Source of the DNA: Iphione sp. A-MEVVRFRX5
Taxonomy: Eukaryota
Assembly: GCA_976226885.1 (NCBI GenBank)
Contig: OZ320314.1
Coordinates: 57,846,001 to 57,910,000, forward strand
Length of the DNA stretch: 64,000 bases
Reading direction: 5' to 3'
The position numbers and the translations under genes were made by a program. The notes under the pieces were generated by a model. The model made no database searches, was not told the origin of the DNA, and saw only the letters and a list, made by a program, of their open reading frames with translations. Shown piece after piece: positions 6,001-64,000 of the stretch; within the stretch, counting starts at the first letter, position 1; each line of letters opens with the position of its first letter.

Positions 6001-8048
6001 CATTCTCAAAGCAATAGGGGGGATTACCGTAATGCAAATGAAGCCATAAGTTCACATTAGTGGTAATCCATGGATAAGATCAATGGGCTCGTACAGCAAG
6101 ATCACCACAAAATTAAACGTTTAATTAGAGTTGATCATGTTGTACCAGTAACCCAACTAAGAGACCGTATAGCTTCACTTGAAACCGAACATGATTTTAT
6201 TTATTATGTAGCAAATTAGAAATAAGGATGTACGTTGTTTACTGATGTGGAGAATGCAAGATGGGCATATGCTTCTGTCCCAGCAGATGTAATTTTGTGT
6301 GTCCACTATGTTTGCCTTGCTCATTCTTTACTCTCAGGGATACCACACCTCTCCAGTGAGCCTGTGACATGTAAATTCCTGCGCCTTCCAAAGTGGATGC
6401 TTCCCTCCTTGGTTGCCTCTCTGGTGTATCGGATCAATGCTCCACGGTCAGCGGGGGAAATCAAACTGCGCTTAATAATGCATGGAAAAAGTCATCGGTG
6501 GGACAGAGGGTCTCTGATTCGCACTGACCGATGGGAGTTGGTGGTGTAGGGAGATAGACGGGCCCGCGAGAAGGTAGCAGATGCTAGTGCGACTGTCACG
6601 AATTCTGCCGCTGCCGGGAGCCGCGTGGATCTGCCCCTGACACTGCCTATCGGCTGGAATGCCTACCAGAGTCCCCACAGGGCAAGTTTGATACACCCCA
6701 AGGCCTCGCCCAATCGACACCCTACCCACCGCGCTTAACTGATGACTCCATCTTCAAATTAATCGTGCTACACACGTCATGGCAACAATCGCCATGCAGC
6801 AGAGCTGCTGTCTTTATGAAAAGAGAAAATACATTGTAGGGTCATTTTACACGTATATTTGTATACGTACCTTATGTATACATATATTGCACACGTATTC
6901 GACCTACGATTTGAAAAAAAATGTATTAAGAGCATTTGGTTGGCTTTCAATGAGGAAATGTGTGTAGCATGTAAAACCCTAGATCCCTATTTAGAAATCG
7001 GTGCACTTTTACTCACTTGACACCTTTCTGGTGGACCAGCCCATAAAACGTTGACGGATGTGCAACTATAGAAGGGAATACAAAACCGTTTACTCTGTGT
7101 TGTTGAGACACGAAACATTTCACCATCACAAAGTGTTCCGTGTTTACCATTAAAGGTAGAACTCTGTGACCATAAGGGACATTTCCATTGAAAATGACTT
7201 GCATGGAAATATCTTCATTAGCAACAATTGTTTGCATATAACTTACACGTACTATTGTAAACTACATACGGTTCATCTAAATGACGTCATGTTCAAAGCC
7301 CGAATACTTCTATAAAATAATGCATTCAAACAAAAGAGTGATTCAGAGGGGAAATGTGAAGTTTACTAAATTCTGTATGCCGGTCAGTCATTTAGAAACA
7401 GATAAAACGTCGACTTCTGGGGCACAAATCTTCATCATGCATCATTGACGATAACGGGGCAGGGAGTGAGTGACTCACGGATAATACCCGACAACAAACT
7501 CCACTTTTACGTCCTTCCATCAGCGTTAGGGGCCCAAGTGAGTATTAAAATGGCTGCCAGCGGCAGGCCATTGTGCTCCCCTGCCCCGCTAGAGTCCCTC
7601 CTTATCCCTTAAATCATGAACCTTCCCTGTCTGGATGAGGCGCTTCCAGTGTTACTCCAGTGTCCCTCCAGCATCGCTCTAGTGGCACCTGGTGTGAATT
7701 TATCAGACAATTAATTGTTTTATGCTGTATCCTTCCCGACGCACCAGTGTACTTGTCCAATATCTGTCTCGGGGTGATGACCTGTCAGTGGAAGTCGCCA
7801 TCCCGCCGTTAAATGTTACTTAACTGCGTTTATATACTGCCCGATATAGGATGTGGCGGTGGTGGGGGACGTGCTATAGGAACAGGGAGGATTCGACTGG
7901 GAAGGCATTGAGTGAGACAAGTACGCACTCGTGGGATTGAAAATCTGGAGATACGGCGGACAATATGGATGAAACCAATGTCCCCGGTAGCCGAGTGCGT
8001 CCCCTGGGATGTGTCCCAGTTCTGAGTTGCCCGGTGTGTGGCTGCATG

Positions 8049-8085
8049 GTGTGTGCATGTGCGTGTGTGCGTGTGTGTGTGTGTG
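8049..8085. repeat. Imperfect (GT/GC)n microsatellite
   Basis: GTGTGTGCATGTGCGTGTGTGCGTGTGTGTGTGTGTG. Confidence 0.85.
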
Positions 8086-11000
8086 CCTGCGAAAGGATAA
8101 AGGATTGGGATGGGATGGCCGCTCCTGTGATGGAATGTCTGTCCATCACCCTTCATGCTCGTGACACACCCCCATTTTGGTAAGGAGTGCCCATTTTGTT
8201 CTATGTGTCATGGTTTAGCGATGACTAAAACAGTGGAATGCACCAGAGCCACTACTAGCAACTCTTTTTTCGAATGATTCGTTAATGGGATCATCTGTAT
8301 ACTTGGACTATTTTCGAGGTTCATGAAAAAAGTCAAATACGAACAATAAACAAAGTATTAGACCTTTACGATGGACTGAATATTGAGGTACCTTTGTACG
8401 GTTATTCTATTCATGACTATTTCTTGTTTCGGGCATGCTCGTAGCAGTATTAATACTGCCTATAAAATTACCATTTTTAGACGTTTTATATTATTTTCCA
8501 AGTATCACGTTAACGAACAGGTGTCCACATGGTTCCTGATAATACATGTATATATTATTACATTATGTTTTACTAATTCTAGGACGAGTGAGACAACTTT
8601 ACCATATTGTCCGTGCCTTGCCTTCGACACGATGAATAAAAACTAATTGAGTAAGCTCTTTCTTGCAGTGTCATATCATAGGCGCTCTCGTGATTATTAT
8701 GAACCTGCGTTCTTCCTCAATTAACCATCAAGGTCATTATATCCTCGATTAAGGTCAATGTTTTGAAGGTGACATGTGGATTACCGGTTAATTATAACAT
8801 CATGTAACAACTTGCAAATTCCTTCTGAGAGACCCTGTCATTTCTTATGGTTCGTGTCGAAGACGGTGGTTATGTCAGGAAAAACCCGACGAGCACATGC
8901 CGGAATCTCCTTTCGTTGGCATGCGCACACATGATATGAGAATGTCAAAGGTTGTCTGAAGGTCACATCAAGGTTACCCTAACCCTAAAACGGAATTGTG
9001 ACGAAATCCCATTTGGAGCTTAATTATTCTAATGATTGTTCATTTAGTTTAAAACAAACAACCCATTTAATCTGCATACTTTAGTCATGCTTGCGTGCCC
9101 CATGTATGGAGCGGCCAATACAGCAGCCAATTAGGGGAGGTAAATGCTGTGATGCAGCGATAGCAGTTGTCAGCTCATACATTATGAAAGCATGTACGCC
9201 AATCCGATGGGAAGACATGGTAAGCATTATGGACGCCAAATTAGGGACGTACAAAATAGCTGCCCCGGGTCTGCCCCAGCATTCCAAACAACCCATTAAT
9301 TAAAGCTCTACCTCATCTGTAACAGCTCAACAAAGTCCAAAATAAATTACACGGAACAGGACAATAGAGGAGAAATACTGCTTGAAGGGACTGACGCTGC
9401 CCGAAGTGTGCTAGTTCAGGGCTCAAGGAAAGAGAGCATTGTGAGCCGTTTATAACGTCCGGTATGACAGACGCCAGGAATGCCTGCTAAATCACTTGTT
9501 ATTAAGTAGTGGGTTGAGCGGTCGCATGCCTCGCGCCTACACTATACATCAGGTGGTAGGACCGTTAATGATATAGGCCCTGGAGATGTATGGCATGGAA
9601 TGAAGCGGAGGGTAAATGGCATTACTGATCGGCCTCCGCTCGTTGAGTCAACTATTCATTTGGTAAGGTTGTCAGGCAATATGTAAATATATATTCTCAT
9701 GTGTATAATGTACATGTATATCATCTAAGTTATAATTACCCACAGAACATGAACCAACCAGCCACCCAAGATACGACGACCAGAATATTGAATTATTAAA
9801 TCGATCACGAGGTTCGTAACAAAAACCCCGGCTGTACTGATTTCCGCAAAGCACTCTGTTCTCCTATTTTTTCATACCAATACCTTCTACAATATGATAT
9901 TTGCTTTCGTTTTTTTCATATAACAACATCATAGCACGGCAGCTAAAACGCTGTAAAGCTAGTTAAAAAGAAAAATGAACTACATCCCACTGCCGATATG
10001 TCAGTGCCCGACACCTCTGTGCTAGGAGATCAGGTTGATATGTAGTTCCATAGGTCGCGAAGGGACCCCCCACTCCCTCCCCACAATACCATATAACTAC
10101 CACCCAACGCTAACCCACCCTCCTCCACATCGCGGCATTGTTCTGTGTTGTACTGAGTCGAGGGTTGAGGGTCATTGATCAGTGGGGCTCCTGGGCCTTG
10201 ATGGCCTGTCCTCCGGTGCGATGTATCATACTTCCTGTTCGATAGGGCTGACCTCCCTTTTTACTTTTACTTAAAGGGGCGAGCTGGTTGTTGAAACCGG
10301 AAGTAACCAGAAATGGACCAAACTAAAGATGCACTGTGAATTAATTTAATTCATGTTCCAAAGTGCATCACTCAGATGAGTATCACCCTTTCCTATATTT
10401 TTTCAAAGGTATTCGACGGACGTATAGGCCTAAGTGGAAATGACTCAAATGGAATCTGCCTGATGATGGAATTATTGCTTGAAGCGAATGACAAAAAGTT
10501 GGTTTGTTATACTTCAAAACTGTCACATATTTTTTTTCATATTCTCTTTCTCTTACCATCTGTCCATTGACAAGGTTATTTTCATCAGTTGGGTAGAGGG
10601 TTCCTTCCCAAGGCCGAATGGATGGTGGCTCCCCAATAAGGGCTCTATTTCAGACATGATGTTTCAAGGGAGTACGTTTTGAACTGTAATCTAAAATAAC
10701 CACTCAAGTATAAAGCAACAACTAAATTATCATTATCATTATTTTTCTTTCTTATTGTCATGGAGAGTTTTCTTTTCCTTAATTCATTATCGCCATGTCC
10801 ATTTCTTTTCATGGCTTCCCTTACACATCGGCCCTGGAGCAAATGCAACTAGCATTTTCGGTTATCGTTTAGTGCTAGGAAACACTTTTAATCTGTGCAC
10901 ACTCCATCAGGGATATTCCTCCTCTGATAGTATTTTTTCTCGTTTTGTTGGATACCAGTGTGATGAATCGGTTACAACAAAGTAATCCACCTGTCCTGTC

Positions 11001-18332: not shown

Positions 18333-18611
18333 GTGCAATAGCTCTGAAAATAGGTTGCAGGTTCAATCCTTTGCCCCGGACCCTTGATGATGACCAGACA
18401 GATTTACTGTAGCCCCAGTCCAAAATATGTACAATGGATACATAAGGTTCTGCCCCCTATGCATAAAAAGACCCCAGAAACCTATTCGAAATAAGAGTAG
18501 GGGGCAATCCTGCATAGTCTGGCCTCTCAATTCTCAATTATAGATAGTAGTATGCTAACCCAGGAGGATATGGAAGAGCAGCTTAAATGATAGCTGAATA
18601 TCTAGTCCCTG
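18333..18611 (+). mobile_element. tRNA-derived SINE (degraded)
   Basis: Head GCAATAGCTC...GGTTGCAGGTTCAATCC (Pol III B-box-like); body AAAAAGACCCC...CCTATTCGAAATAAGAGTAGGGG. The 3' part recurs at about 43052-43171. Confidence 0.6.
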
Positions 18612-43051: not shown

Positions 43052-43171
43052 GAGAGTAGGGTATCAAATAAATCCCGGGTATTCTGGTCTCTCAATTCTC
43101 AACAATAGATGGTAGTATGCTACCCCAGGAGGATATGGAAGAGCCCTGCCATGTGATTGGGAATATCCAGT
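43052..43171 (+). repeat. Second partial copy of the SINE 3' region
   Basis: TCTGG(T/C)CTCTCAATTCTCAA..ATAGAT(G/A)GTAGTATGCTA(C/A)CCCAGGAGGATATGGAAGAGC is shared with 18518-18579. Confidence 0.8.
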
Positions 43172-44265
43172 TCCTGGTTAAAGATACAATGAAATGAAAT
43201 GACATGAATATACATTAAACCTGATTCCATCACCTCCCTATCGACCATCCTTGCTACTCTACACACAATTCCTTGGAACAGAATTGACAATTTTCTCTCT
43301 ATACCACCACCATCCCAGGCATATTCACTTGGAACCAAGCAGTGTCAGAATGGTTAGTACTGTAGTTGGGCCAAATATGGATCCAAATTAAGGGCCAACC
43401 ACTTGAGGGAGTTCATACCAGAATAAAGAACAAAACGGAGCTACCTAATCAATGTAAACCAAAAAAGGAGAACTCATTTGTGTATCTTATTGATATCTGT
43501 GATATGAAACTAACAGTCAAAGAGGCTCATCTTCCTCCTAGCGCTTTTCAACAGCTGAAAAAGAAAAATTGGAGACGCTGTGTTATCAAAGCAGATTTCC
43601 AGGCACCTTAGACAGTTGTACTTGGCATTGCCCAATGGAAATTAAAATCATTGATAGTATAAGCAGGGTGTTACCCTTGCAAAATTACTTGGAAATGAAA
43701 CATTATAGTCAGCAACATTGGGTTTCACCGTAGAAATAATGGTATGTTAGCAAGTGTAAGAAAAAATGTATGAAGTGCTCATGACATAATACTCAATGAT
43801 CTTAAGATTGTTCGCTTGTACTAATTGTAATCAGTGTCATAAACGTGGCCAATCACATCTCGTCCGCTCACCTGTAGGCCTAGATACCAGCAGGAAAAAG
43901 ATGTAATTCGACTGCACTGGACACACGTACACATTGGTAAATAACCATTCCAGTATAAAGATGATTACAAAGTGTTTATCAAATGCGTCTATAACATACG
44001 GGTATGTTGACGCAGACGACGATAAAGATCATGCAGTCGACTATCCTGTTTGAAGTAAAACGACAGCAGCGTAATATACATGCATTGAAGTGAATTTTCG
44101 GGAAGCTTAAGCGATTTAGGACACTCTTCATTGTGCTCGAGTACGCCAACGGGGACGTTATGTTTGTCAGGGACTGTACCCTTGCTCCTCGTACTTGTCC
44201 TCCTACTGTTATTGTCACTGCGGTGAAGCCGCCCCTGCAGTCACTAATGCGATCGGTGCTTCCTC

Positions 44266-44266
<1 letters not shown>

Positions 44267-44298
<32 letters not shown>
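44267..44298. repeat. (TG)16 microsatellite
   Basis: Direct read. Confidence 0.95.
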
Positions 44299-44301
<3 letters not shown>

Positions 44302-47300
44302 TTTTTCGTTTGTGCGCGTGGTGGTGGGTGTAGTGCGGTGCCGTGACACCGACACCCCACTCACACACAAAACCTATGCCATCAGTCCGTGTGATGGGAC
44401 TATATCTACCTTTACTCACCACATTCATTGTTTCCGTGCCTCCAGGGATTTACGTCTTCAAACTTAGACCTGACTGCCGTCAAATGGGAAATTTAAATTC
44501 AGCCTTAGGACTTGTTTGCCGACTACACTAGCGGTTTTCATAGTTAAGTGACTACAAATGAAGACTTGAGGCTGTCGTGGAGCACTTTTTGAAGTAAATG
44601 ATTGCTACACCGTGGGAAGAATATCTGTTGATAACACTATTACACTAAAATTTCAGTTCATTTTGTTTAACGTGAAGCACATTTACAATGATTCACTTTT
44701 TTAAACAAAAGTTGAACCTGGTCACCCGTTCGTGATGAAGCCAGCAAAATTAACGGATCTGAAACTGGATCCGTGCGTATGTCGTTTTGAGAGTAATCTT
44801 TACTAAACCGTTAAAATAATATAATAATTTTTGCCAAAGACAAAATCATTTGTAGAAACTATTATAGAATCAAATCACCATGGCTGTATAGATGTGTATC
44901 TTCCTCTAAAGGCCCATCAGCTCATGGTGTCCTATTAGTCACACGGGGGCGCGTGTGGCTCTTCACGCACCATTGGAGTAATGCTCATTGTTCCCACGTA
45001 GTTCCATCAGTGATTAATACTATGGGTTGGTAACAGAGAGACCTAAATGGAGCTGGCAGGGGAACACCCTCCCGCTTCTGTGCCTTCACAAACCACACTG
45101 CCGCCTGCTCTGGCCGCGTCGTGTTCACCTGAAGCCATCTGATGACTCAGGTAACTGGACCCCTGCTGCACCCACCCATCAACCCTCGCCGCTGCACACA
45201 TTCAGGGACCGACTGATATCCATGTCAAACATCATGTAACACGAGCAGAGCTCTTTGTCTAACATGTCCCCGCATGACATTAAAAAGTCTCACACATCTG
45301 TTCCCTTTCCTCCTCCTCGAACTCCTTGTCAAAATGTTGAAAGCATCTCTGCGTAGGATCTAACTATAGAAGACAAGATCCTCACAGTATTCTTCATCCA
45401 CACCTCGTGAATTCAACTAATCATTTATGATAGACTGAACGACATTATCCTCCCTTCTAGTCCACCGAAAATAACCACCTGGCCTTTAGAAGTGACATTA
45501 TAGTCGTGTCCGGGTTGTAATTGTTTCACTTGTCTTTGAAATATTTTTACGCATCAGTATTTTCATAAGATCATAAAAATATAATTATTCGTGTACTAAA
45601 AGGCTGATATCATGTGTAGAATGAATTGAAAATTTGAAAATTTACTTTAGAAATACTTCTCTTGTAACAAAAATAAGTGCACTACACCAAAAAGGTTTTT
45701 ATTCATCAGTTTTACTCAGGAGACATACAGCAACAGCATCAGGTAGGCGAGTCCAGAGAGAGCGGTTTGGGCTCCCACCATATATATGCATCTACATTTG
45801 TAAACAATTTTACAAGATTGACCCTAAAGGTTATTTCTTTAGAAGACGTTGAAAAGAACATTTTCTCTTCTAATTGATTCCTTTACTCTAGTAATTTATG
45901 ATAAACTTTCAGTAACGTCCAGTTTCTAACTCTTTTGGATCCTTACTTAAACAACTGGAATAATACTTTTAAGAGTTTTCATAATTTGATGTGCCAGATG
46001 GCATTATTACAGGCAACTCTCAAGTGTCATGAAACATCTTATTATAAGAACGAAAACGACGTACAAATGCGCACTGTAGTAAGAAATCAAAGAAACAAAT
46101 TTGACATATCCATAGCAGAAAAACTCTGAGTATGGCTTATGTCTAAAGAAAGCCTTTAGTAAAAACCCAAACTTTTGAAGCTTCCCCTGCATAGTTCCTC
46201 TTCATTGATCAAAGCCGCCCTTTACATAATAACCTAGCAGCTCTCACACTAGCCACATTCACAAAGCATGCAAGGGAAGCTTAGTGTCTCCATCTTTATC
46301 ATTATTTTGTTGGCTTTTTTTATGTCGGCTCAAGGAAAACAACGGCAAAGCTTTTGTCCTGGTATCCGAACGCCATCTTCCTTCTGGTGTGTGCAGGGTG
46401 TGGTAGATAGGTGGAGCTTGTCTGGAGGTGAGCGGGTTGAGGATGAGTAGTGTGGGTGGGTTGTATTGGCTGTTTTTGTGTGGCATCCCCTTGTGGCGAG
46501 GGGCTGTTAGTAGAGTGCAACCGTTAAATGGACACGAGGATGGGCCGGGTAATAGGGAATCGACCGGCCATCGGTGGGGTCTTCTGCAGGACATGGACAG
46601 GCGCCGTTAGACCAAATAACTGTAGGATTGAATAATGGAAGGCGCAATCAATGTCCGCCGTGCTTCTGGTGATGGATCAAGGAAGGTCCCCATGTTGGTT
46701 ATGTCCACAGTTCAATCGTCTATTTCCATTTATGTACACATGTAGAGAGTTCTCTTTGAAGAACCTGCGTACTTAATGATACTCAAGTGGACCTTGCGTT
46801 TCAAGTAAATACATGACCATTTCCCATCAATACCACAAACCCGCAAACATTTTTCATGGCATGTTCTTTTGGTTTGCATGCAACGCGTATGATTGTATCA
46901 AAGTTGGCAAGAGCTTTCTCACAAATAGTGGATCTGAGAAGGAAATACAGTCTGTTATAATTTTCTTTACTGTCTCGGCGTACTGTTTGCCACAAACTGT
47001 TTTCAAACCAGAGATTTCATCCCGACCGCTGTTTTAATCATAAGATGACCTTTAAGATCGAAGCGAAGAACTAATAGTATCATAGCTTAAATATAGACTC
47101 GGGAAATGTCAGATATTGAAAGAGGTCAACAAACGCTGCATTCACCATTCGCGGTTTAAAGTGTGTTTTATCCGACCCAAAAATCTATCCTTTGGTTAAT
47201 TATAGAATTTAGGTTTCAACCGTAGCTAGAATAGGAGTGTTCTCTGTTAAAGGTTTTGTGGTTTTCGCTGGACATCAATAATTTTGCTGTGGCCTGTGCC

Positions 47301-48044: not shown

Positions 48045-48628
48045 GGCTGGCTTTCCATGCATCCGGAAATTACCTCTGGAGCATGTGGTCCATGCTCTGG
48101 AAAAAAAATTCTATTGCTCACAACTTAAGTGTTCCCACAAATGCATGCTATGTGCTCCATGCTCTGTGTCCAGAGGTAAAAAAAAGAACCTGGGCCATAA
48201 AATTCTCCGGAAACCAGAGCACAGAGACCCACATAGACCAGTAGAATAGGGAAATAAGGGTGAGGATCATGTAAGATGTGGGTGCAGGTCATGTAAAATA
48301 AAGGTGATGGTCATGTGAAATATTATTGAATTTGCATATCATTTGCATTAAACTACACAATTTCAGCCGATATGTGTAAACCTCCGTGAAAAACTGCACA
48401 GTTTCCACCAATATGTGTAAACCTCCGTGAAAAACCACATGCACAACTTCCACCAATATGCTTCTCCTATCCTCTTTCTCTCTCCCCTTCTCTCTCTCCA
48501 TCTCTGGTTCTCTCTGGTTTCCGTATACATACATGGAAAGTACCTCTCCGGAGAAGGACAGAAAACGGTCTTATTCTCTGGACGCTCACACAGTGTGGAA
48601 AAAAATCTGTATACATGGAAAGCTGGCC
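48045..48628. mobile_element. PIF/Harbinger-type MITE (584 bp)
   Basis: TIRs GGCTGGCTTTCCATG / CATGGAAAGCTGGCC (13/15 match), TAA TSD at 48042-44 and 48629-31, and an internal duplication of ATATGTGTAAACCTCCGTGAAAAAC. Confidence 0.8.
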
Positions 48629-51600: not shown

Positions 51601-54600
51601 ACAGGTTCCCATCATACACCGACGTCTAAACTTTAGGTTTACACTCCCGTTAAATGAGTTGATAATACTTAACCAACAGTACTAGAACATGAACATGGTT
51701 GCCTGCATGGATGGCATGGCACTGCTAATACAAGTGCAGGCTTGAGTGAGTGGATGACACTATGCCAATGGTGCTAGTACATGAACACACGTAAATGAGT
51801 GGACTCCACAGTGGTACATTTATATGGTATATGTTTCTACTGGCACATGATGTGAGTGGATTACATTCTACGGACGGTGCCAGTACACAGAAGCACATCC
51901 GTTCTTTCGTCCGTTCTTTGAGAACCCGGAGAGCCGTATGAAACACAGCTCTACCAAGCTTCAGTTGGCGACCGGGGTGCCATTTGTAAAACTGCTGATA
52001 TGCCAATTTCCGTGTCTGACCCTAGGGACCCTGACAGAGCAACACACGCACCAGGCGCGCGCCATCAAAGCTCTCCTCTGAGGGGTTCTCCTTAGTGCCG
52101 TCCGTCTACTGTTTGATATCTGAAACAAACAGGACAAGAAAATTGCAATAATCGCCTCATATGGACCACGCGCCGCCATAGTAATAGGCCTCCAGGTTAG
52201 ATGTTCAGTTGTGCCTGTATTTTTCCTGTCATCCATGTTTTCTAGCATCGTTTACTTCTCTTTTTGCCGCGCGATATCTGTCTCTCAGTCGCGCACGCTT
52301 TCTCCGAGTACATACAAATATCTATATATACATATATATTTATATGCTCGGTGTATATGTAAAACCACTGTGTTTCAGGGGATGTCCCTTGATCTAAGTT
52401 TGCCTCCAACATCGCTATCTTTGCCTTGTGTTATTTTTGTCTATCTCTGCGTTGTGTTACTTTTGTCTATTAGAGATAACCCTCGGCCGGGTGCGGACAG
52501 GCCAATTCAATTACCACGTTGCCATAACAGCCGATCTGTTGCCCGTGAGATAGGGACCTAAAGCACAGGTCCTCTAATGGCCGCTCCTCAGTGACTCACA
52601 GCGCCGGGTGAGCCTTGCGTGCTATACTACTCAGAAATGTCCGTTTTCCGCTGGCGCACCCACGCTCCGCCTCACCCGTGCACCCACAGGGCATCCATTC
52701 CTCCCATGTTACAAACGCATGTCGTTTTCAGAACTAACCTGCCCTCTTCCACCAAGTGAACATTCCCCTTGCACTCTCGGGAAAAGAAAGCCGGTCTTGC
52801 GGGTCAGGCTGTCCACGTGGCCCGCCTTAGAGTGTACACATTACTGGCCTTTTGAGTCATTAATATTTCTCATGCCATCGATTGGGTACATGGATTAGGT
52901 CCATCGTGATTTATTGCTAGCATTTGCCTACTTTTATGGACAGGGGCGCCTGATCGGCTATGCTTTAATGGAGTATTACTCCGGGTGCCGTGGCAGTATA
53001 GTCCTCATTCATATCGAAATCTCGTCCCTAACGTGAAAATTAAAATTAATTATTGTCTCACGTTTTGTCTCGTTCGCATTGCGCCATTGATAACATACAT
53101 ATCTTGGATGAGACGTTACAGTTGCTAAATATGAACTTTAATGAACGCGTGACTATCTAAGGCCAAACAATGTCTATGCGTGCCTTTCAGCTACTGCGTA
53201 TATTGTTCTACCGTGCACCACTGTGATAAAGGCAACATTGATACCCAAAATGCCCCTGCAACACAGTATTTAAGTAGAGTAGAGTAATTGAATGAGATTA
53301 TTTGCCCTAAACTATTTGTATACATGTTGGGTTGGACTAAGACTAATGTACAAGGCCTGTAGAATAGGGTTTAACTTCAGCCCTTCCTTGAGGCATACCT
53401 TTTAAACACAAAATATTACACCGCACTTAGAATGTTGCCTCAGCTTTTAAGTTTTTTCATCCTTATAAGATAGATTCATAAGCCATAGGGGAAAATGATG
53501 CTTAAATATTAGATGTGCTGTGGGTTAAAATGATATTGATCGGAAAGCTACAACTAAAACCCGTTACCTTGATCATTTTGGCTGAAAAGTAAGCGGGTGA
53601 TGACGACCGGTGTCTGAAAATTGACTTTGGAAAAACAAATCTATTCCCAGCTTGTCTCTCTGCTGTTACCGTCACCATATCTCGCCCAGGAGCATTGCTA
53701 GGACGGGTGCAGACAACTACATCCAGTTCCTAATCAGCCAGAACTCCTCCAGTGGCAGGGCGAGTTACACTCTAACCATCAGGGTCCGCCTGTCCTATTA
53801 CCGTGCTGTTTATTGCCCTTCTGGTGCCTCACCCCAACTAAAAAAAAACCTTCATACAACTACAGGCAGCGATACTACGGCTTAACTGATGACCTGCACA
53901 CGCATGTTTGTCAGACTCTCAAGGCCTGGTGGACCCCCTAACGACCGGTGCGAGTCGAGCGGTAATTATCGCTATAATGTAGCCCTCGGGTTCATCCCCC
54001 TTGAAACTGCAAAGAAAACTACACGTAGCTTTTAGTCATTTAGTCCCAAATGGTGCCGTCATGTTACATAGGAAAGTGCATTACTTCATTTATTTGAAAA
54101 TGGGCACCGCGACGTGGGGAACGTGACTGCATTTTCATGCAGGAAAGGCAAACAACGATGGGCGGAACGGGAACTTGCCATTTTTCATTTTACCTGAGTA
54201 CAGTTCTTGCATTATGTATTAACAATTCCTTTAAGTCAATTTTATTAAACAAAGTGTAACTTGAAGAAGTTCCGTCCAGCATCAGTGTCTCCCTATTTGT
54301 CTTTCAACGTATACAGTGTTTAATAGACGCCTAAAATGCATACATACTTATATACAAGATATTTCCCTCTAAATTCCTTTTCTTCTCAATTAAGCCCGGT
54401 TCAACACATATAGAATGGAATATGGCATGTGATATCTACGTCCACCTATCAGTGAGACTTACAATGTAGTTCCCTGTGATCCCACGCTCTGTGCGAATAT
54501 GCCTGAACCACTTTGGCCACATGATAAATCAAGTCTAACGTATTCACGGGTGCGTCTCTCCTAAACTCCCCTCTCGATGAGCTGATTCGTTGCACACGGG

Positions 54601-57954: not shown

Positions 57955-58612
57955 ATGCGGACGATCGGACACGTACTAGTAATCTCCATGGATTGGTGGA
58001 GTCAGTTGTATGGATTCTACGGTGTAGAACAGAATAGAATGTATGGAAAAGTTTTTAAGCAAAACACATCAGAAAATTTTCTTGAACGATACAAGAAGTG
58101 TTACACCCAGAGTGATTATCAGTATTTTCGTACTGAAAACCGCAATCCATCTCTTAAATTGCTTAGTAGTTCCGCGATTGACGGAATGATCTTTCAAAAG
58201 GCAGTAAAACATAAATATTCGTGTTTTGCCTTCTTAACATGGGTCTGTGGTCAAACAGAGAAATCGATTGCGGCCTCGCCTTTGCCGTAATTTTAGGTTA
58301 ATAAGCAGACGTGTTCGCCAGTATCAGCCATCTGTTTTTCTTTTACCTTTCACAAGTTCGCCACGCTAAGGGATTACCTCACTTACATCGACTGGGAAGG
58401 AGAAGTGCACATACAAAATTGATGACACCTGTTCCTGGTCCTATACTGTTCCATGAAACCGAGTGCACATCGATAAGCAGTTTTGCTGGCCTCCTGCTTG
58501 TGGTAATTGGCTTGGTCGAAGAGTAACTGCCTTTACGTACTGCAGTGAATGGCGATCGAGCAAAGACTGAGCCTACACCCGAAAACAAATCCGTAATCAC
58601 TACGTTCACGGC
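57955..58612 (+). pseudogene. Degraded coding-like sequence truncated by the Maverick-like insertion
   Basis: 111-aa ORF (DWWSQLYGFYGVEQNRMYGKVF...) followed by protein-like fragments in shifting frames (FATLRDYLTYIDWEGEVH; KQFCWPPACGNWLGRR), ending at the element terminus. Family not recognised. Confidence 0.25.
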
Positions 58613-58650
58613 AGTAGTGTAGTAGGAGCAACCCTTGGACACAGTTTTAA

Positions 58651-58820
58651 GGTCACGTGACCAATGACGTCACATGTCACGTGTCCTGTGACGTCACTGG
58701 TCACGTGACAGATCCTCAGAGGGAGGGGGCAACATCACGTGACAAGCAAACGTCATGGGTCACATGATAGATAGTATGGGGAGGGAGGGTGCAGGAGGAA
58801 TCACATGATCACTGACGTCA
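58651..58820. promoter_or_regulatory. Subterminal E-box/CRE array: 24-bp unit x2.5 plus dispersed copies
   Basis: Units GGTCACGTGACCAATGACGTCACA (58651-74), TGTCACGTGTCCTGTGACGTCACT (58675-98), GGTCACGTGACA (58699-710). CACGTG at 58654, 58678, 58702, 58736; TGACGTCA at 58665, 58689, 58813. Confidence 0.8.
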
Positions 58821-59068
58821 CAAACGATATATATTATGTAAGATTACATAGTATTAGATGTAACAACGTAAAGATGATAAGATAGAACGTCAACACAGAA
58901 TATACGAGATAACAGAAGGGATATATGACATAATAGAGCGAGTAACGTCCAGCGTAAGTACAGATAACGCACACACCACCACGGACTTAGTACACACGGA
59001 ATGGAAATAGAATAACGAAGTGGATACTCCATACGAGAGAACAAATATAGTTACCACGCTCAAACCAT

Positions 59069-59263
59069 TCACACATATACACACATAACAGTTAAGGCAA
59101 TTAGTTGGATGTGAAGACCACGTATCCACACAGAGTCGTAATATCCATTTGTAGTAAGAACACAACAGATAGATACACGGCGTGAGCGCAAGTAAATAGC
59201 GAATGCCATCAATAAGATAACCATTGCGATATATATTCCTCCACTTATATAGAAATATCCCAC
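59069..59263 (-). CDS. Possible divergent small single-pass membrane ORF or exon (GYFYISGGIYIAMVILLMAFAIYLRSRR...)
   Basis: Hydrophobic stretch of about 20 aa followed by RSRR (positive-inside pattern). The start is GTG, not ATG, and there is no homology support. Confidence 0.2.
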   Translation of the reverse strand: MGYFYISGGIYIAMVILLMAFAIYLRSRRVSICCVLTTNGYYDSVWIRGLHIQLIALTVMCVYV

Positions 59264-59331
59264 ATCGTTTCACTCCAAAGGAAGATACTCACGTTAGGTC
59301 TATATATCGATATACAGCGACTTTTGCAAAG

Positions 59332-60569
59332 ATGGAACCAATCTCAAGTAACGTATACATGGAGATGTATCAAGACACAGTGAAAATCGAAAGGAGAAGA
59401 GGTAATGCGACTATAAGAAAAATCAGAGTACACAGACAACTATTTGACATCGCCGACCAGTGTTGGGCAAACTTGCAAGAGGGTGAAGAAATGAAAGTGA
59501 CGGTAGACCACAAGATCTGGGTCATAGAGATGAAGACATATGCAGGGAGAGAATACGTTTGCTTTGTTCGTCAATCTAGAGATGGTGATCGTATTAAGTA
59601 AGTGACTAGATAAATAATACACGCAATTTAGAGTGACTATACTGACTCATCAGTAATCGCAGATAAGCAGTATCACACACACACACATCTTTATCGAGTG
59701 ATGTACATTGATTGATATTAATAATCTATATATATAATGGACACAGTATCAATTTCTACTGATATTAGGAGTTTAACATCGTACAGTATAGGTACTATTA
59801 TTGCAGTTACGATTGTTTCAATCTTACGGAGGACGAGTGTATGACAGCAATTGAACGCATAAAGAAGGAAACAAGGGTCACAGAGCAAGACAAGGGGCAA
59901 GACAGAGACGAGACAAAGGAGAAAGTCGCAGAGACCACAAATAAAAAGGACACTGAACAGGGAGCAGACGAAGATGAGCCAAGTAAGAAGAAGATGAAAA
60001 CGGAAGAACCAAAAGAAGCGGAGCCAATCAAGTATAACCGTTATACATATCTATTAACGTCTTGTGTTGATGGGAAAGCGGTTAGTAGTAAACGTTCGTA
60101 TATTTGTCGTGATTTCTGTGTTGCTGAGGCCACAATTGAACAAGCTGCCAATGACATGGTTGAATTTCCAGTAGATGAAGACCTATTAATCAAAGTTAGT
60201 GAACTGGTCGAGAAAGTATATGCATTTATGATTCAAGCAGAATACAAAGCTAAAATAAAGGAATGGTGTAGGGGATGTGACTGCGACGAGGGTAACCAGG
60301 CAGCACATATCCCAGGATGTGTGAAACTACCAGACGAGTTAGATTCAACCGCTGTTCATGCAGCTCATATCAGGGTATCCGTCACAAGGCTGATAGAAGC
60401 TAGCATTCGCATGTACAAAGTGTACATAGGTAATAAGCACATTGAGGACGATGAGGTACCAATTGACGTCGATGTATGCAGAAAAGTAATCGAAGAAGGT
60501 GAAAAGTATGCAGAAGTGTACATGACTTTGGAATTTGAACGAGATTATGATATCATCGCTAGAATGTAA
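59332..60569 (+). CDS. Two-exon gene (59332-59597 + 59807-60569, 342 aa): N-terminal PC4-like ssDNA-binding domain, acidic/Lys linker, C-terminal domain with WCRGCDCDEGNQAAHIPGC Cys/His motif
   Basis: Donor AA|GTAAGT at 59598 and acceptor TTATTGCAG| at 59806 (209-nt intron) join two ORF-track ORFs in frame: ...RIK-N-YDCFNLTEDEC-MTAIERI. TATATAT at 59301 lies about 30 nt upstream of the ATG. The PC4 similarity (WVIEMKTYAGREYVCF...DG...FNLTEDEC..AIERI vs RYVSVRDFKGKVLIDI...G...ISLNPEQW..LKEQI) was judged by eye. Confidence 0.8.
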
Positions 60570-60576
60570 TTGAGAG

Positions 60577-60747
60577 ATGAGGATATTCATGCTGTTGACA
60601 CAAATTATTATTACCACAATATATGTAAAACAGAAGAGTAAGTCATCTGTCAAAACATTTATTGATACTGTTGTAACCAATTATTACTACACTAATAGTC
60701 TTTTGTCAGATCACGATAGCTATATAACCACCACCTTGAATATATAG
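60577..60747 (+). CDS. Putative spliced small hydrophobic peptide (60577-60637 + 60710-60747; MRIFMLLTQIIITTIYVKQKNHDSYITTTLNI, 32 aa)
   Basis: Canonical 72-nt intron: GTAAGT at 60638, branch-like ACTAAT at 60691, TCTTTTGTCAG ending 60709. The ATG is 7 nt after the stop of the PC4-like gene. Confidence 0.35.
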   Translation: MRIFMLLTQIIITTIYVKQKSKSSVKTFIDTVVTNYYYTNSLLSDHDSYITTTLNI

Positions 60748-60749
60748 AT

Positions 60750-60884
60750 ATGCGCTACAATTTGGTCGTTGCAAATACGAATACAGAAAGAACACCTCTA
60801 TGTTGCAAAGTCAAACACGTTGACATCAAGCAAACCAAGTTAGAATGGTTACATAAAATTACGACAAGTATAGATTCCAAGTGA
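60750..60884 (+). CDS. Putative small ORF (MRYNLVVANTNTERTPLCCKVKHVDIKQTKLEWLHKITTSIDSK, 44 aa)
   Basis: ATG 2 nt after the previous small ORF's TAG; TATATAA at 60721. No homology recognised. Confidence 0.3.
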   Translation: MRYNLVVANTNTERTPLCCKVKHVDIKQTKLEWLHKITTSIDSK

Positions 60885-60967
60885 ACAAGATAGATTGGAT
60901 CATATAATGGAAATTATCATTGTATATTATAATAAGGAGATGTAACTACTTCACATGTATAGAAGAG

Positions 60968-61200
60968 CAGTGATATATTATATGTGTATTATTAATATAT
61001 GTTATCCAAGTTTTGAAGGCATTATGCAGCATATAAGAAACTGAACTGTCACTATCACATGTTCAGTCAGTAGCAGTAAATATATAAGTTATATATAATG
61101 TATGCATATTATTAAATATATGTTATCCAAGTCTTAATGGGTATGCGGTATATAGGAGGAACCGAACCGTCACTATCACTTGCAAATTCAATAGGAGTGA
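60968..61200. repeat. About 121-bp diverged tandem duplication
   Basis: GTTATCCAAGT at 61001 and 61122; GTCACTATCAC at 61048 and 61169. Confidence 0.8.
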
Positions 61201-61544
61201 ATGTATAGTAATGTTTTCGTAGTGATCTCGTAGAAGTAACACATACTGTTACGCACGGACCTATATAACAACTTCCCTTATCGTACACACCATATATAGT
61301 AATATGTTATACGGTCAAGAAACCACAATAAACATGGTCACAAGGGCGATTAGATCAGAGTGGGGAAACTTACTGAATAAAGCACATATGCACCAACATA
61401 TTGATGTTATTGACTAAGCGCGTTATTATTACACACTCACCCATTGCCTAGTGTCAGTGGGTATGTTTACACTTATAATAGGGATGCATATGGATACGAG
61501 AAGTCTGTGAACAAACCCCACACATACACCCACAATGGTAGGTT

Positions 61545-61623
61545 AACATCTGAGTAGCTCACGAGGATTTAAAAGCGTTATACACACATTAGTTGGACAA
61601 ACATCTGTGTAGCTCACGAGGAT
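61545..61623. repeat. 24-bp direct repeat
   Basis: AACATCTG(A/T)GTAGCTCACGAGGAT at 61545 and 61600. Confidence 0.8.
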
Positions 61624-62163
61624 AAAAGGACTTATCTAAGCTAATGAACATTCGCAATACAAGCTCCATATCTGTTATGCAAGAGTTACTACATAATGAA
61701 TGTCTATACCTATAACTCTTACAGAGGTCCACATATCTCTTTGGTAAATTACCACACTTCGAACACACACATGCTCGCATAAGCCGGGTTCCAGTATGAC
61801 TTCAATATCTAATATATGCTGAACTATCTAAAAAAAAAAAAAAAAACCCATATCTATTACGTACGAGCTATTATATAACGTGGTCTATATCTGTAACTTT
61901 CATAGAGGAACACCTATACCCTGTAAAATTGCCACATCGGGCACACGTACTCATATAATCCGAGTATCAACATGGTTGCATAAGATCAGATATATGCTAA
62001 ACGAATAACAACAGATACATGCTAAACGAGGGTAAAAAAAAAAAAAAAACTATAAACGCAAATTTCGTGAACATCCACTACACGTCAATCGCGTAAGAGA
62101 AATACGACCCCACGTCTAAAATATATAAGGCACGTAACGTCTCTGACTATATGAGGTGAAATC

Positions 62164-62307
62164 TTAATTACTGATGTTTCCATCATCATCATCAAATGTG
62201 GATAATAAAAGTTGCACTAAGCTGTACAGCCTCAGCATGTCATCTTCATTCTCGTTGCCCGTCTCACGCTCAAAAACGTCCCAAAGAGGAAAACCATCAC
62301 AGTCCAT
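62164..62307 (-). CDS. Putative acidic small ORF (MDCDGFPLWDVFERETGNENEDDMLRLYSLVQLLLSTFDDDDGNISN, 47 aa), or an alternative terminal exon of the upstream gene
   Basis: Open frame with protein-like acidic/aromatic composition. The ATG overlaps the predicted upstream stop by 11 nt. An alternative acceptor CCCGCAG ending 62314 would fuse it in phase 0 to the S/T/P-rich ORF. Confidence 0.4.
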   Translation of the reverse strand: MDCDGFPLWDVFERETGNENEDDMLRLYSLVQLLLSTFDDDDGNISN

Positions 62308-64000
62308 CAAATTCTGCGGGCAAATTCTGCAACTGCAACGAGAAGGAGGTATAAATACAAAGCAAGAACATTATATAGATAATTTACAAAGCATGAACCC
62401 AACGCATAGCAAAACGATATGATATATTAAGTATATGAACACACTTACATATATATTACACAGGCACATAATGCTAGTTAAAGCATGAACCCATCGCATA
62501 GCAAGTGATATGAAATATTAAGTACATTAACACACTCACACATATATATATACACAGTCACATAATTTAGCTAAACTCGTACCCGTTCAGAGCGACGAAC
62601 GTGAGGAGGTGTGGGACTCCCAGCAAGACGACCACGACGAAGATCGTAGCCATGTATGGATTGAGTCTCGATCAAACTGCTATCGGACACAACAGACGAA
62701 GTACTATCCCGTCGCTCACGACGACTCCAATTACAAGATGATGGAGATGGCATCATTTCAAAGTCAAGTTGTCTGGGTCGAATTTTCCTTTTCTTATGAG
62801 TGTGACGTGGAGTTGCTTGTATGGCAGTGTCTGACACTGTAGAAGACACACTCGGATGTCTAGACCTTGATTCAGGTGGTGGTGGAGACAGAGGAAACGA
62901 GGCAGCGTATGCTGTTGCTCTGGCCTTATCAACGTCATGTCCATGTTCCACATATCGAGGGCAATTAGCATTTGTGAGTGTCACGTCAAGCTCACTATCA
63001 GTCCCATTATCAGGAGAGGTCACAGATGATAACGGGTGCGGTATGTCACCACTACCAGATGTCGCAAGTATAGTGCGTATCCTGTCAGTGATCGAAACTG
63101 AAGAGCAAGACATTGAAGGTGGAAGAGGATAATACTCATCAGTTTCTACCATCTCTGATTCCTCTCTAGTCGGCGAATCAACTAAGGGAGTCTCAAGACA
63201 AGCAGAACGAGAAGGAGTGGCACAATTGTTGGCTGTTGTGGAGGTGGCTGTAGAAGTTGTAGAATGCACGTTCAGACGCGTTGTAGTGATAGATAGACAA
63301 ACTGGTGTAACATCTCCCCGACAAGGGGCTGGTAACGCCCGTCCCGTGAAAGGGACATGGTACGACGTAGACGTAAACGACGAACATGGAATACGTGAAT
63401 GGTGCGATCCATCAAAGATGACACTGTCTTGATTACCGACGGTTGTCGACACACATGTGGATGAATATCCAGCGTAGGGCGCCACTAGTAGAGTAGATGC
63501 AAGCAGATTTGATAGCATGGACGAGGTCGACATTGATGGTGTAAAACAGGGACGTCGTGAGTCGCCAAGGGCAACAGTCCACAATACAGCCAAAGAAGTA
63601 GGTGTAGACGACAACTGTGAACGTGAGAGATGGGGCAGTGGCGTTCCAGACAAACCAGTCAGGAGATTACCTCCCATAGAAGCACAATATGATGAATAGT
63701 GAGGGTCACCATTCATCGGCAACACTGGGAGAACGGGTGGAGAGGAAACAGATGCACGACACACGTTCCCAGTGTAGCGCAAGTGTTGTGGAGTAGCATC
63801 AAGCGAAGTAGGTACAGTTGATAGCATTGCTGTACCACATGCGAAGAGACGTTTCTCAACAGGGGCGACCCTAGTGTTTGCAGATATGGGAGACATCAAA
63901 GTAGAAGCCGGTGGACGAGCAGAGGGAAGTGGAGTAGACATCAGTTGCAGAGGACGAGAATAACGACCATCAGTCGTAACACGTGAAGATGTATGTTGTA
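62297..64000 (-). CDS. 5'-incomplete Ser/Thr/Pro-rich, probably disordered protein (>476 aa in the main exon 64000-62583, plus a putative terminal exon 62332-62297 encoding LQNLPAEFDGL)
   Basis: The 456-aa ORF frame stays open to the window edge. Donor CGG|GTACGA at 62582 and a strong polypyrimidine acceptor CTCCTTCTCGTTGCAG ending 62333 give ...RRSER-LQNLPAEFDGL*. The ORF contains HKKRKIRPRQLDF and HGYDLRRG. The splice is predicted only. Confidence 0.65.
62388..62571. repeat. 92-bp diverged tandem duplication inside the predicted intron
   Basis: AAAGCATGAACCCA(A/T)CGCATAGCAA...ATATTAAGTA...AACACACT...CACATAAT begins at both 62388 and 62480. Confidence 0.85.

What the first reader, a model, noticed from the sequence alone, without database searches (positions are those of the whole stretch)
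58613..64000. Left arm of a Maverick/adintovirus-like endogenous virus carrying an intron-containing accessory cassette instead of core genes
Seen: an AGTAGTGTAGTAGG terminus, a TF-site array, and two convergent spliced genes each followed by small ORFs. Known: Polintons/Mavericks have TIRs starting with AG/AGT microrepeats, 6-bp TSDs, and core pPolB, integrase, ATPase, protease and capsid genes. Inference: this 5.4 kb is the variable accessory region of such an element. The splice signals look intact, so it may be young or active.
Basis: partly seen in the sequence, partly recalled or inferred. Interest (0 to 1): 0.8.

Follow-up and report, generated by a model that had tools for sequence, protein, structure and literature searches.

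The report
Left end of a Maverick-type element
The last 5.4 kb of the window is most likely the left end of an integrated Maverick/Polinton-type virus-like element, a known kind; its first gene belongs to an unnamed family that sits beside Maverick core genes wherever its surroundings could be read.

Summary
The observation largely holds. AGTAGTGTAGTAGG occurs once, at 58613, where the + strand turns A- and purine-rich. A dense array of CRE and TCAYRTGA sites follows at 58650-58830. Two convergent genes fill most of the rest.

Gene A (59332-59597 and 59807-60569) has no Pfam, PDB or word-search match. A full HMMER search found 19 unnamed relatives. In all nine related loci I read, from two datasets, the relative lies beside Maverick genes: rve-chromo integrase, A32-like ATPase, protein-primed polymerase. 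The exception is one copy that keeps only the arm.

In the closest relative, three copies become alike exactly at AGTAGTATTGTAGG. That is 12 of 14 bases of the window's terminus, and a CRE and an M-box follow it. (AGT)2 is the commonest published Maverick end motif. Gene A's phase-2 intron sits at the same place in that relative.

A confident model of a full-length relative shows a PUR-alpha/Whirly/PC4-like fold plus a Cys2-His-Cys helical domain.

Not shown: core genes, the right repeat and the target duplication, which would all lie beyond base 64000. Gene B's intron and any activity are also unshown.

Verdict: a new member of a known kind, of moderate interest.

The parts
58613..58626 (+). 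Left terminus of the element. It begins with the (AGT)2 end motif, so the element starts at 58613.
   Evidence: It is unique in the window and lies at the composition change point. 12 of 14 bases match the copy-defined terminus of the closest relative. (AGT)2 is the commonest published Maverick end motif (PMC8097293).
58650..58830 (.). Terminal enhancer-like array of alternating TCAYRTGA (E-box/M-box type) and TGACGTCA (CRE) sites, including a 58-nt palindrome at 58652-58709.
   Evidence: Motif census, repeats and fold z = -6.2. Relatives have the same kinds of site at the same end. In L001 a CRE and an M-box lie 36-50 nt from the terminus. In L004 three GTCATGTGA sites lie 170-210 nt in and are followed by TATAAA.
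59332..59597 (+). Gene A, exon 1 (88 codons plus 2 bases). It encodes most of the predicted PUR/Whirly/PC4-like N-terminal domain.
   Evidence: ORF and donor GTAAGT at 59598. 31% identity over all 88 residues to the matching ORF of L001, E 3e-11.
59598..59806 (+). Gene A intron, 209 nt, GT-AG, phase 2.
   Evidence: Same position and phase as the intron of L001, read from the L001 sequence. Full-length relatives P0005 and P0013 read across the junction in a single ORF.
59807..60569 (+). Gene A, exon 2 (1 base, 253 codons, stop). It holds an acidic/basic linker and a helical domain with an invariant C-x2-C...H...C motif.
   Evidence: HMMER search found 19 relatives, the best at E 1.4e-17. Alignment A2. 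11 of 11 near-invariant residues are kept. 3-base periodicity p 1e-10.
60570..62162 (.). Spacer between the two genes. It is AT-rich, with several local two-copy tandem duplications (units of about 121, 55 and 203 bp), two A-runs (61830-61846 and 62034-62049) and small ORFs of 37-56 aa of unknown standing.
   Evidence: AATAAA occurs at 61111, 61327 and 61376. No similarity to relatives.
62163..64000 (-). Gene B. Its large exon is rich in Ser, Thr and Pro and is open to the window end (62583 or 62571 up to 64000 and beyond). A possible last exon lies at 62163-62313, behind a 269-nt candidate intron that contains a 91-bp tandem duplication (62388-62566). No relatives were found.
   Evidence: Pfam found nothing. 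Word search found nothing. No counterpart in L001-L005.

Best explanation
Bases 58613-64000 are the left-terminal arm of an integrated Maverick/Polinton-type element, that is, a self-synthesising, virus-like DNA element of an animal-type genome. The rest of the element, if present, lies beyond the window.

Shown:
- The element begins with the (AGT)2 end motif.
- Within about 220 bp of the end lies a dense, partly palindromic array of CRE (ATF/CREB-type) and TCAYRTGA (USF/MITF/TFE-type) sites.
- The first gene, pointing inward, is a spliced member of a conserved, unnamed family.
- A convergent orphan gene rich in Ser, Thr and Pro follows.

Inferred:
- The terminal trinucleotide repeat serves the integrase, and serves protein-primed initiation with sliding-back, as terminal reiterations do in adenovirus and phi29. 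This rests on established knowledge, not on a test here.
- The site array is a host-factor-driven enhancer and promoter for the terminal gene, much as ATF sites next to adenoviral inverted terminal repeats drive early units. This analogy is from my own knowledge.
- Gene A's product binds single-stranded nucleic acid through a PUR-alpha/Whirly/PC4-like domain and binds zinc through a Cys2-His-Cys domain. It would act as a replication-associated single-strand-binding protein or as an early regulator.
- Gene B is a lineage-specific accessory protein, largely disordered and probably nuclear.
For: Boundary: the unique 14-mer lies at the composition change point.

Family linkage: HMMER found 19 relatives of gene A's exon 2. 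Their surroundings were read in nine loci.
- L004 and L005 are two copies, 99.89% identical over 11.2 kb. Similarity starts 285 bp upstream of the homologue. The gene order is homologue, A32-like ATPase, rve-chromo integrase, then the convergent protein-primed polymerase.
- L003 has the same order.
- L001 and L007 are two further copies. Similarity starts exactly at AGTAGTATTGTAGG and runs through the arm into an integrase block.
- L002 and L008 carry the homologue and an rve-chromo block.
- L009, from another dataset, has the homologue next to an A32-like ATPase.

Terminus match: 12 of 14 bases, the only hit in L001, against 0.09 expected.

Same site types at the same end in relatives.

Shared phase-2 intron.

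Fold: the AlphaFold2 model of relative P0013 has pLDDT 89.5. Its top PDB matches are PUR-alpha repeats I-II, MRP1/2, Whirly and PC4/Sub1 (E from 3.6e-3, probability 1.0, TM about 0.5).
Against: - No Maverick core gene is visible in the window (Pfam; tblastx with four relatives' elements).
- No inverted copy of the terminus lies in the window, and no target duplication can be checked. Membership therefore rests on linkage seen in other genomes at about 30% protein identity.
- Eight of the nine loci come from one assembly (ERZ25767047).
- One relative copy (L006) keeps only about 3.8 kb of arm, so arm-only remnants do exist.
- The fold matches are marginal in E-value. They were obtained on a relative, not on the window's own protein; the single-sequence model of the window's exon 2 failed at pLDDT 41.
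- Gene B has the opposite third-position bias to gene A and no relatives.
Confidence: 0.78

Rival explanations
1. The region is an arm-only remnant or a non-autonomous derivative. The terminus, array and gene A do come from a Maverick-type element, but the core modules are gone, through truncation, internal deletion or rearrangement. On this view gene B and what lies beyond are not part of a complete element.
For: One of the three copies of the closest relative (L006) shares only about the first 3.8 kb with its sisters and has no core genes downstream. Gene B has no counterpart in any relative and a different codon bias. About 96% of vertebrate Maverick loci are reported as degraded (PMC8097293).
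Against: Gene A and gene B both have long open frames. Gene A keeps 11 of 11 conserved residues and canonical splice sites. The + strand skew continues unbroken to the window end. In L002 and L008 several kb of non-core genes also separate the homologue from the core block.
Confidence: 0.15
2. The region is an ordinary or domesticated pair of host genes. Gene A would be a host copy of a gene family that Mavericks also carry. The CRE/E-box array would be its normal promoter, and the AGTAGT string a coincidence.
For: No core genes are visible. Gene A has a host-type intron, and intact vertebrate Mavericks are reported to lack introns (PMC8097293). The array consists of ordinary cellular factor sites.
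Against: The 14-mer sits at the composition change point and matches, at 12 of 14 bases, the copy-defined terminus of the closest relative, which also carries the intron. No relative examined lies outside a Maverick-type context except the arm-only copy. The rest of the window is nearly free of ORFs.
Confidence: 0.06
3. The region belongs to another class of mobile element or integrated virus, for example a cut-and-paste transposon or an ambisense parvovirus-like insertion, which would explain the terminal palindrome and the convergent genes.
For: A palindrome rich in ACGT cores lies near the end, and the genes are arranged convergently.
Against: No transposase, Rep/NS1 or capsid family matched any ORF. 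No inverted repeat pairs with the terminus inside the window. The only relatives found are linked to a protein-primed polymerase and an rve integrase.
Confidence: 0.01

Closest known systems
Maverick/Polinton elements of animals, as described for vertebrates (PMC8097293)
   Same: The 5'-(AGT)2 end motif. A non-core 'accessory' region between the terminus and the core modules. In the relatives: an rve integrase with a chromodomain, an A32-like packaging ATPase and a protein-primed family B polymerase in two modules.
   Different: The terminal gene has a spliceosomal intron; none was seen in intact vertebrate elements. That gene is conserved across at least six lineages rather than variable. There is a dense CRE/E-box array next to the terminus. 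The core genes, inverted repeat and 6-bp duplication were not seen for the window's own element.
Adintoviruses (proposed Adintoviridae; PMC8502044)
   Same: They are animal-associated and combine an rve integrase with a protein-primed polymerase. They carry many accessory genes of unknown function (the 'Adintoc' and 'Oncoid' classes), some with paired Cys motifs.
   Different: No virion-protein or accessory-gene likeness was tested or found. The fold search against predicted viral structures returned only generic small phage proteins.
PUR-alpha / Whirly / PC4 / MRP single-stranded nucleic-acid-binding fold
   Same: The N-terminal half of the gene A family is predicted as repeated beta-beta-beta-beta-alpha units. 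These are the top PDB fold matches.
   Different: There is no sequence-level match in Pfam or PDB, and E-values are only 1e-2 to 1e-3. The family has an extra C-terminal helical Cys2-His-Cys domain that has no structural match.
Early transcription units next to adenoviral inverted terminal repeats (own knowledge, an analogy only)
   Same: A linear protein-primed replicon with short terminal reiterations, and ATF/CREB-type and USF-type sites close to the end that drive an inward-pointing early gene.
   Different: No homology was shown. The function of the array and the timing of gene A's expression are untested.

Membership tests
Maverick/Polinton | Protein-primed family B DNA polymerase gene | tested here: inconclusive
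   None in the window (Pfam; tblastx), but only 5.4 kb of the element is visible. It is present beside gene A homologues in L003, L004 and L005 (PF03175, 158 bits).
Maverick/Polinton | Retrovirus-like (rve) integrase gene | tested here: inconclusive
   None in the window. It is present in L001-L005, L007 and L008 (rve 36-44 bits, often with Chromo).
Maverick/Polinton | Capsid genes, protease and A32/FtsK-like packaging ATPase | tested here: inconclusive
   None in the window. An A32-like ATPase sits next to the homologue in L004, L005 and L009 (25-28 bits, above the cut-off). Capsid and protease were not identified in any locus with Pfam.
Maverick/Polinton | Conserved end motif 5'-(AGT)2 or (AG)3 | tested here: met
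   AGTAGT lies at 58613, at the composition boundary. The same start is found at the copy-defined terminus of L001, L006 and L007. The motif is as published.
Maverick/Polinton | Terminal inverted repeats | not testable with these tools
   The right end would lie beyond base 64000. There is no inverted copy within the window. Exact-protein look-ups of the window's two ORFs found no public contig to extend it.
Maverick/Polinton | 6-bp target-site duplication | not testable with these tools
   Only the left flank (58607-58612) is visible.
Maverick/Polinton | Multiple copies with unrelated flanks, as a sign of mobility | tested here: inconclusive
   There is no second copy in the window or in the searchable collections. 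Relatives do show it: L004/L005 at 99.89%, and L001/L006/L007 at 98.5-98.9%.
Adintoviridae (proposed) | Adenovirus-like virion protein module together with the polymerase and integrase | not tested
   The virion genes are not visible in the window, and named animal viruses were not fetched as comparators, by rule.
PUR/Whirly/PC4-like fold (gene A product) | Repeated four-strand sheet plus helix units that match solved members | tested here: inconclusive
   The model of relative P0013 has pLDDT 89.5. Foldseek probability is 1.0 but E is 3.6e-3 and TM about 0.5. There was no sequence-family hit. The window's own full protein was not modelled.

The most novel reading that the evidence does not exclude
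The gene A family is a so far unnamed, conserved 'terminal early gene' of a large branch of animal Mavericks. It would be a protein that binds single-stranded nucleic acid and zinc, transcribed from a host-factor enhancer (CREB/ATF plus USF/MITF/TFE) built into the element's end, and in some lineages processed by host splicing. On this reading these elements carry a terminal regulatory and replication unit analogous to the early units next to adenoviral terminal repeats.
Probability: 0.3. Interest if true: 0.6.

Novelty: new member of a known kind. Interest (0 to 1): 0.42.

Why it matters
Mavericks/Polintons are the largest DNA transposons of animals and are now viewed as integrated viruses. 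Their core genes are well catalogued; their terminal accessory regions are not.

This locus and its relatives point to a conserved, unannotated gene at the very end of the element. It has a predicted nucleic-acid-binding fold, a shared intron and a recognisable promoter architecture. That gives annotators a new marker for element ends. It also gives a concrete candidate for how these elements plug into host transcription.

For the window itself, the practical result is an annotation. The coding-dense, strand-skewed block after 58613 is mobile-element DNA, not a pair of host genes.

Tried and rejected
Searches that found nothing:
- Pfam on all gene pieces and on ten other window ORFs.
- PDB sequence searches with both gene A exons and with the family profile.
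- Word-based protein searches with gene A's exon 2 and gene B's large exon. With the family alignment, the word search found only P0013 and one close relative.
- Exact-protein look-ups of the window's two long ORFs, meant to extend the contig: not on record.
- tRNA and Rfam scans of the window.

Other dead ends:
- A single-sequence AlphaFold2 model of the window's exon 2 reached only pLDDT 41 and was not used.
- The fold search against predicted viral structures gave only generic phage hits.
- There is no DNA-level similarity between the window and any related locus, nor among most lineages.

Ideas considered and dropped:
- An ambisense parvovirus-like insertion, suggested by the palindrome and the convergent genes. 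There is no NS1 or VP match.
- Cut-and-paste superfamilies, judged by their terminal motifs. There is no transposase and no paired repeat.
- An arm-wide, replication-linked strand skew. In the relatives the A excess follows the coding strand.
- A second terminus at 52622-52631 on the minus strand (AGTAGTATAG). It is at chance level, with no site array and no composition boundary.

Steps left out by rule:
- The joined-exon protein of gene A was neither built nor searched. The exons were searched separately, and natural full-length relatives stood in for the joined product.

Things to declare:
- The look-ups of relatives' proteins returned host contigs that carry integrated Maverick-type elements. 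Neighbouring genes with DEG/ENaC-channel and Death-domain matches suggest the hosts are animals, but they are not named. I read and compared these loci as they stand.
- A slip: early in my reasoning I wrote a rough PC4-like motif from memory. The likeness was later tested only through the fold search.


Full report
**1. The observation**

The window reads like DNA of a large eukaryotic genome.
- GC is about 0.42, there are no N, and CpG observed/expected is 0.7-1.0. It is therefore not vertebrate-like, and I do not take it for human.
- It holds no tRNA or Rfam match. Only three ORFs of 150 aa or more occur in 64 kb, and two of them lie in the finding.
- AGTAGTGTAGTAGG occurs once, at 58613-58626, with no inverted copy in the window.
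- At this point the + strand changes character. A-T skew goes from about 0 to +0.25 and purine excess rises. Two-segment change points fall at 58548 and 58718. The stretch from about 58.5 kb to the window end is the most skewed 5 kb of the window.
- Bases 58650-58830 carry all three TCACGTGA and three of the four TGACGTCA of the whole window, plus TCACATGA variants and CRE half-sites.
- Bases 58652-58709 form a 58-nt palindrome (DNA fold -25.1 kcal/mol, z -6.2).

**2. The genes**

Gene A (+):
- It starts at ATG 59332 and has a GTAAGT donor after 59597. Exon 2 starts at 59807, after a TTGCAG acceptor, and the stop is at 60567-60569. The phases (2+1) fit.
They were searched separately.

Gene B (-):
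- Its large exon is open to the window end, at least 471 codons.
- It is rich in Ser, Thr and Pro (181 of 471 residues) and has strong codon periodicity. It is far longer than any ORF in shuffled sequence.
- It may splice to a 49-codon last exon, with the donor after 62583 and the acceptor before 62313. Or it may simply stop at 62571-62573. Nothing decides between the two.

The 1.6-kb spacer between the genes holds several local two-copy duplications and two A-runs. Its small ORFs cannot be told from chance.

**3. Relatives of gene A**

- Pfam, PDB sequence searches and the word-based protein search were blank.
- The full HMMER search of 1.84 billion representatives found 19 unnamed relatives. 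The best had E 1.4e-17 at about 30% identity.
- They share a core with invariant Cys, Gly-Cys and His residues (C-x2-C, then His, then Gly-Cys) and an Arg-rich helix. The window's protein keeps 11 of 11 near-invariant residues.
- Full-length members (P0005, P0013) read through the region that the window's intron interrupts.

**4. Genomic context of the relatives**

The context was read as it stands.

- L004 and L005 are two copies on different contigs, 99.89% identical over 11,224 bp, with unrelated DNA to the left. Similarity starts 285 bp upstream of the homologue. The gene order is homologue, A32-like ATPase (28 bits), two small ORFs, rve-chromo integrase (44 and 31 bits), three ORFs, then a convergent 1437-aa protein-primed polymerase (PF03175, 158 bits).
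- L003 has the same layout.
- L001 and L007 are copies of the lineage closest to the window. Their similarity starts exactly at AGTAGTATTGTAGG. It runs for 11.6 kb through the homologue, a 2-kb spacer and a convergent block with an rve integrase and a large NADAR-ending protein.
- A third copy, L006, shares only about the first 3.8 kb.
- L002 and L008 show the homologue, some non-core ORFs and an rve-chromo block.
- L009 comes from a different dataset. There the homologue sits between a Death-domain gene and an A32-like ATPase.
- The hosts are not named. A neighbouring gene in L006 has a DEG/ENaC-channel match and L009 carries the Death-domain gene, which suggests animals.

**5. The terminus**

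- The window's 14-mer matches the copy-defined terminus of L001 at 12 of 14 bases. It is the only such match in that locus, against 0.09 expected over both strands.
- In L001 the only TGACGTCA of the 20.6-kb locus lies 36 nt inside the terminus, next to a TCACATGA.
- The L004 terminus reads AGCAGCATAG. Three GTCATGTGA sites and a TATAAA follow within 240 bp.
- Published work gives 5'-(AGT)2//(ACT)2-3' as the commonest end motif of vertebrate Mavericks. [quoted passage not shown]
- L001's homologue has a GTAAGT...TTTCAG intron at the same codon position and phase as the window's. By that standard the intron is shared by relatives.

**6. What gene A may do**

- An AlphaFold2 model of the full-length relative P0013, built with the family alignment, is confident (pLDDT 89.5).
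- Its N-terminal half consists of repeated four-strand-plus-helix units. The best PDB matches are PUR-alpha repeats I-II, MRP1/2, Whirly and PC4/Sub1, all binders of single-stranded nucleic acid (probability 1.0, E from 3.6e-3, TM about 0.5).
- The C-terminal half is helical, carries the Cys2-His-Cys motif and has no structural match.
- I infer a protein that binds nucleic acid and zinc. A single-strand-binding replication factor or an early regulator are the likeliest roles. This is inference, made on a relative.
- The adintovirus and double-jelly-roll virus papers I read name no such protein.

**7. What remains open**

- No core gene similarity exists anywhere in the window. The right end, the inverted repeat and the duplication are out of reach, and the contig could not be extended.
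- Whether the element is complete or, like L006, only an arm cannot be told.
- Gene B is an orphan. Its T-rich third positions contrast with gene A's A-rich ones, so the + strand is A-rich over both genes. In the relatives the A excess follows the coding strand. This is unexplained.

**8. Verdict**

This is the terminal, non-core arm of a Maverick/Polinton-type element: a new member of a known kind. Two points are worth recording. One is a conserved, intron-bearing, unnamed terminal gene family with a predicted PUR/PC4-like fold. The other is a CRE/E-box array built into the element's end.

- The joined-exon step was left out.
- The look-ups of relatives returned host contigs with integrated elements, which I only read and compared.

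Noticed in passing
window 58613-64000: The + strand is A- and purine-rich over both gene A (sense +) and gene B (sense -). Gene B's third codon positions are 42% T, while gene A's are 34% A. In the relatives the A excess follows the coding strand instead.
   Followed up: partly
L001 12768-20627 and L007 (same block): The integrase block has GC 0.52 and CpG observed/expected 1.3. The arm that moves with it has GC 0.37 and 0.6. The block's 1472-1574-aa protein ends in a NADAR domain (64 bits), and no PF03175 hit occurs in the 995 residues visible.
   Followed up: partly
L006: This copy of the L001-type element shares only about the first 3.8 kb (terminus, gene A homologue, spacer) with its sister copies and has no core genes downstream. 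It is an arm-only remnant or derivative.
   Followed up: partly
L009 197-751: A Death-domain gene (48 bits) lies just upstream of the gene A homologue and the A32-like ATPase, on a 3-kb contig from a second dataset (SRR14906797).
   Followed up: no
L005 1-860: A satellite with a 25-bp period, each unit containing a TCAYRTGA motif, lies about 9 kb to the left of the element copy.
   Followed up: no
window 52622-52631 (minus strand): AGTAGTATAG, an (AGT)2-type string, points leftward. About one such match is expected by chance, and there is no site array and no composition boundary. I judge it to be chance.
   Followed up: yes
window 18506-18579 and 43071-43144: Two dispersed copies of a 74-nt sequence at 88% identity, probably a short interspersed repeat of the host.
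   Followed up: no
window 62388-62566: A 91-bp unit is duplicated in tandem (85% matches) inside gene B's candidate intron or 3' region. The A-B spacer holds similar two-copy duplications (units of about 121, 55 and 203 bp), the 203-bp units each ending in a 16-17-nt A-run.
   Followed up: no
window 8044-8092 and 44255-44329; 48350-48431: (TG)n microsatellites at the first two places, and a 41-nt tandem duplication at the third.
   Followed up: no
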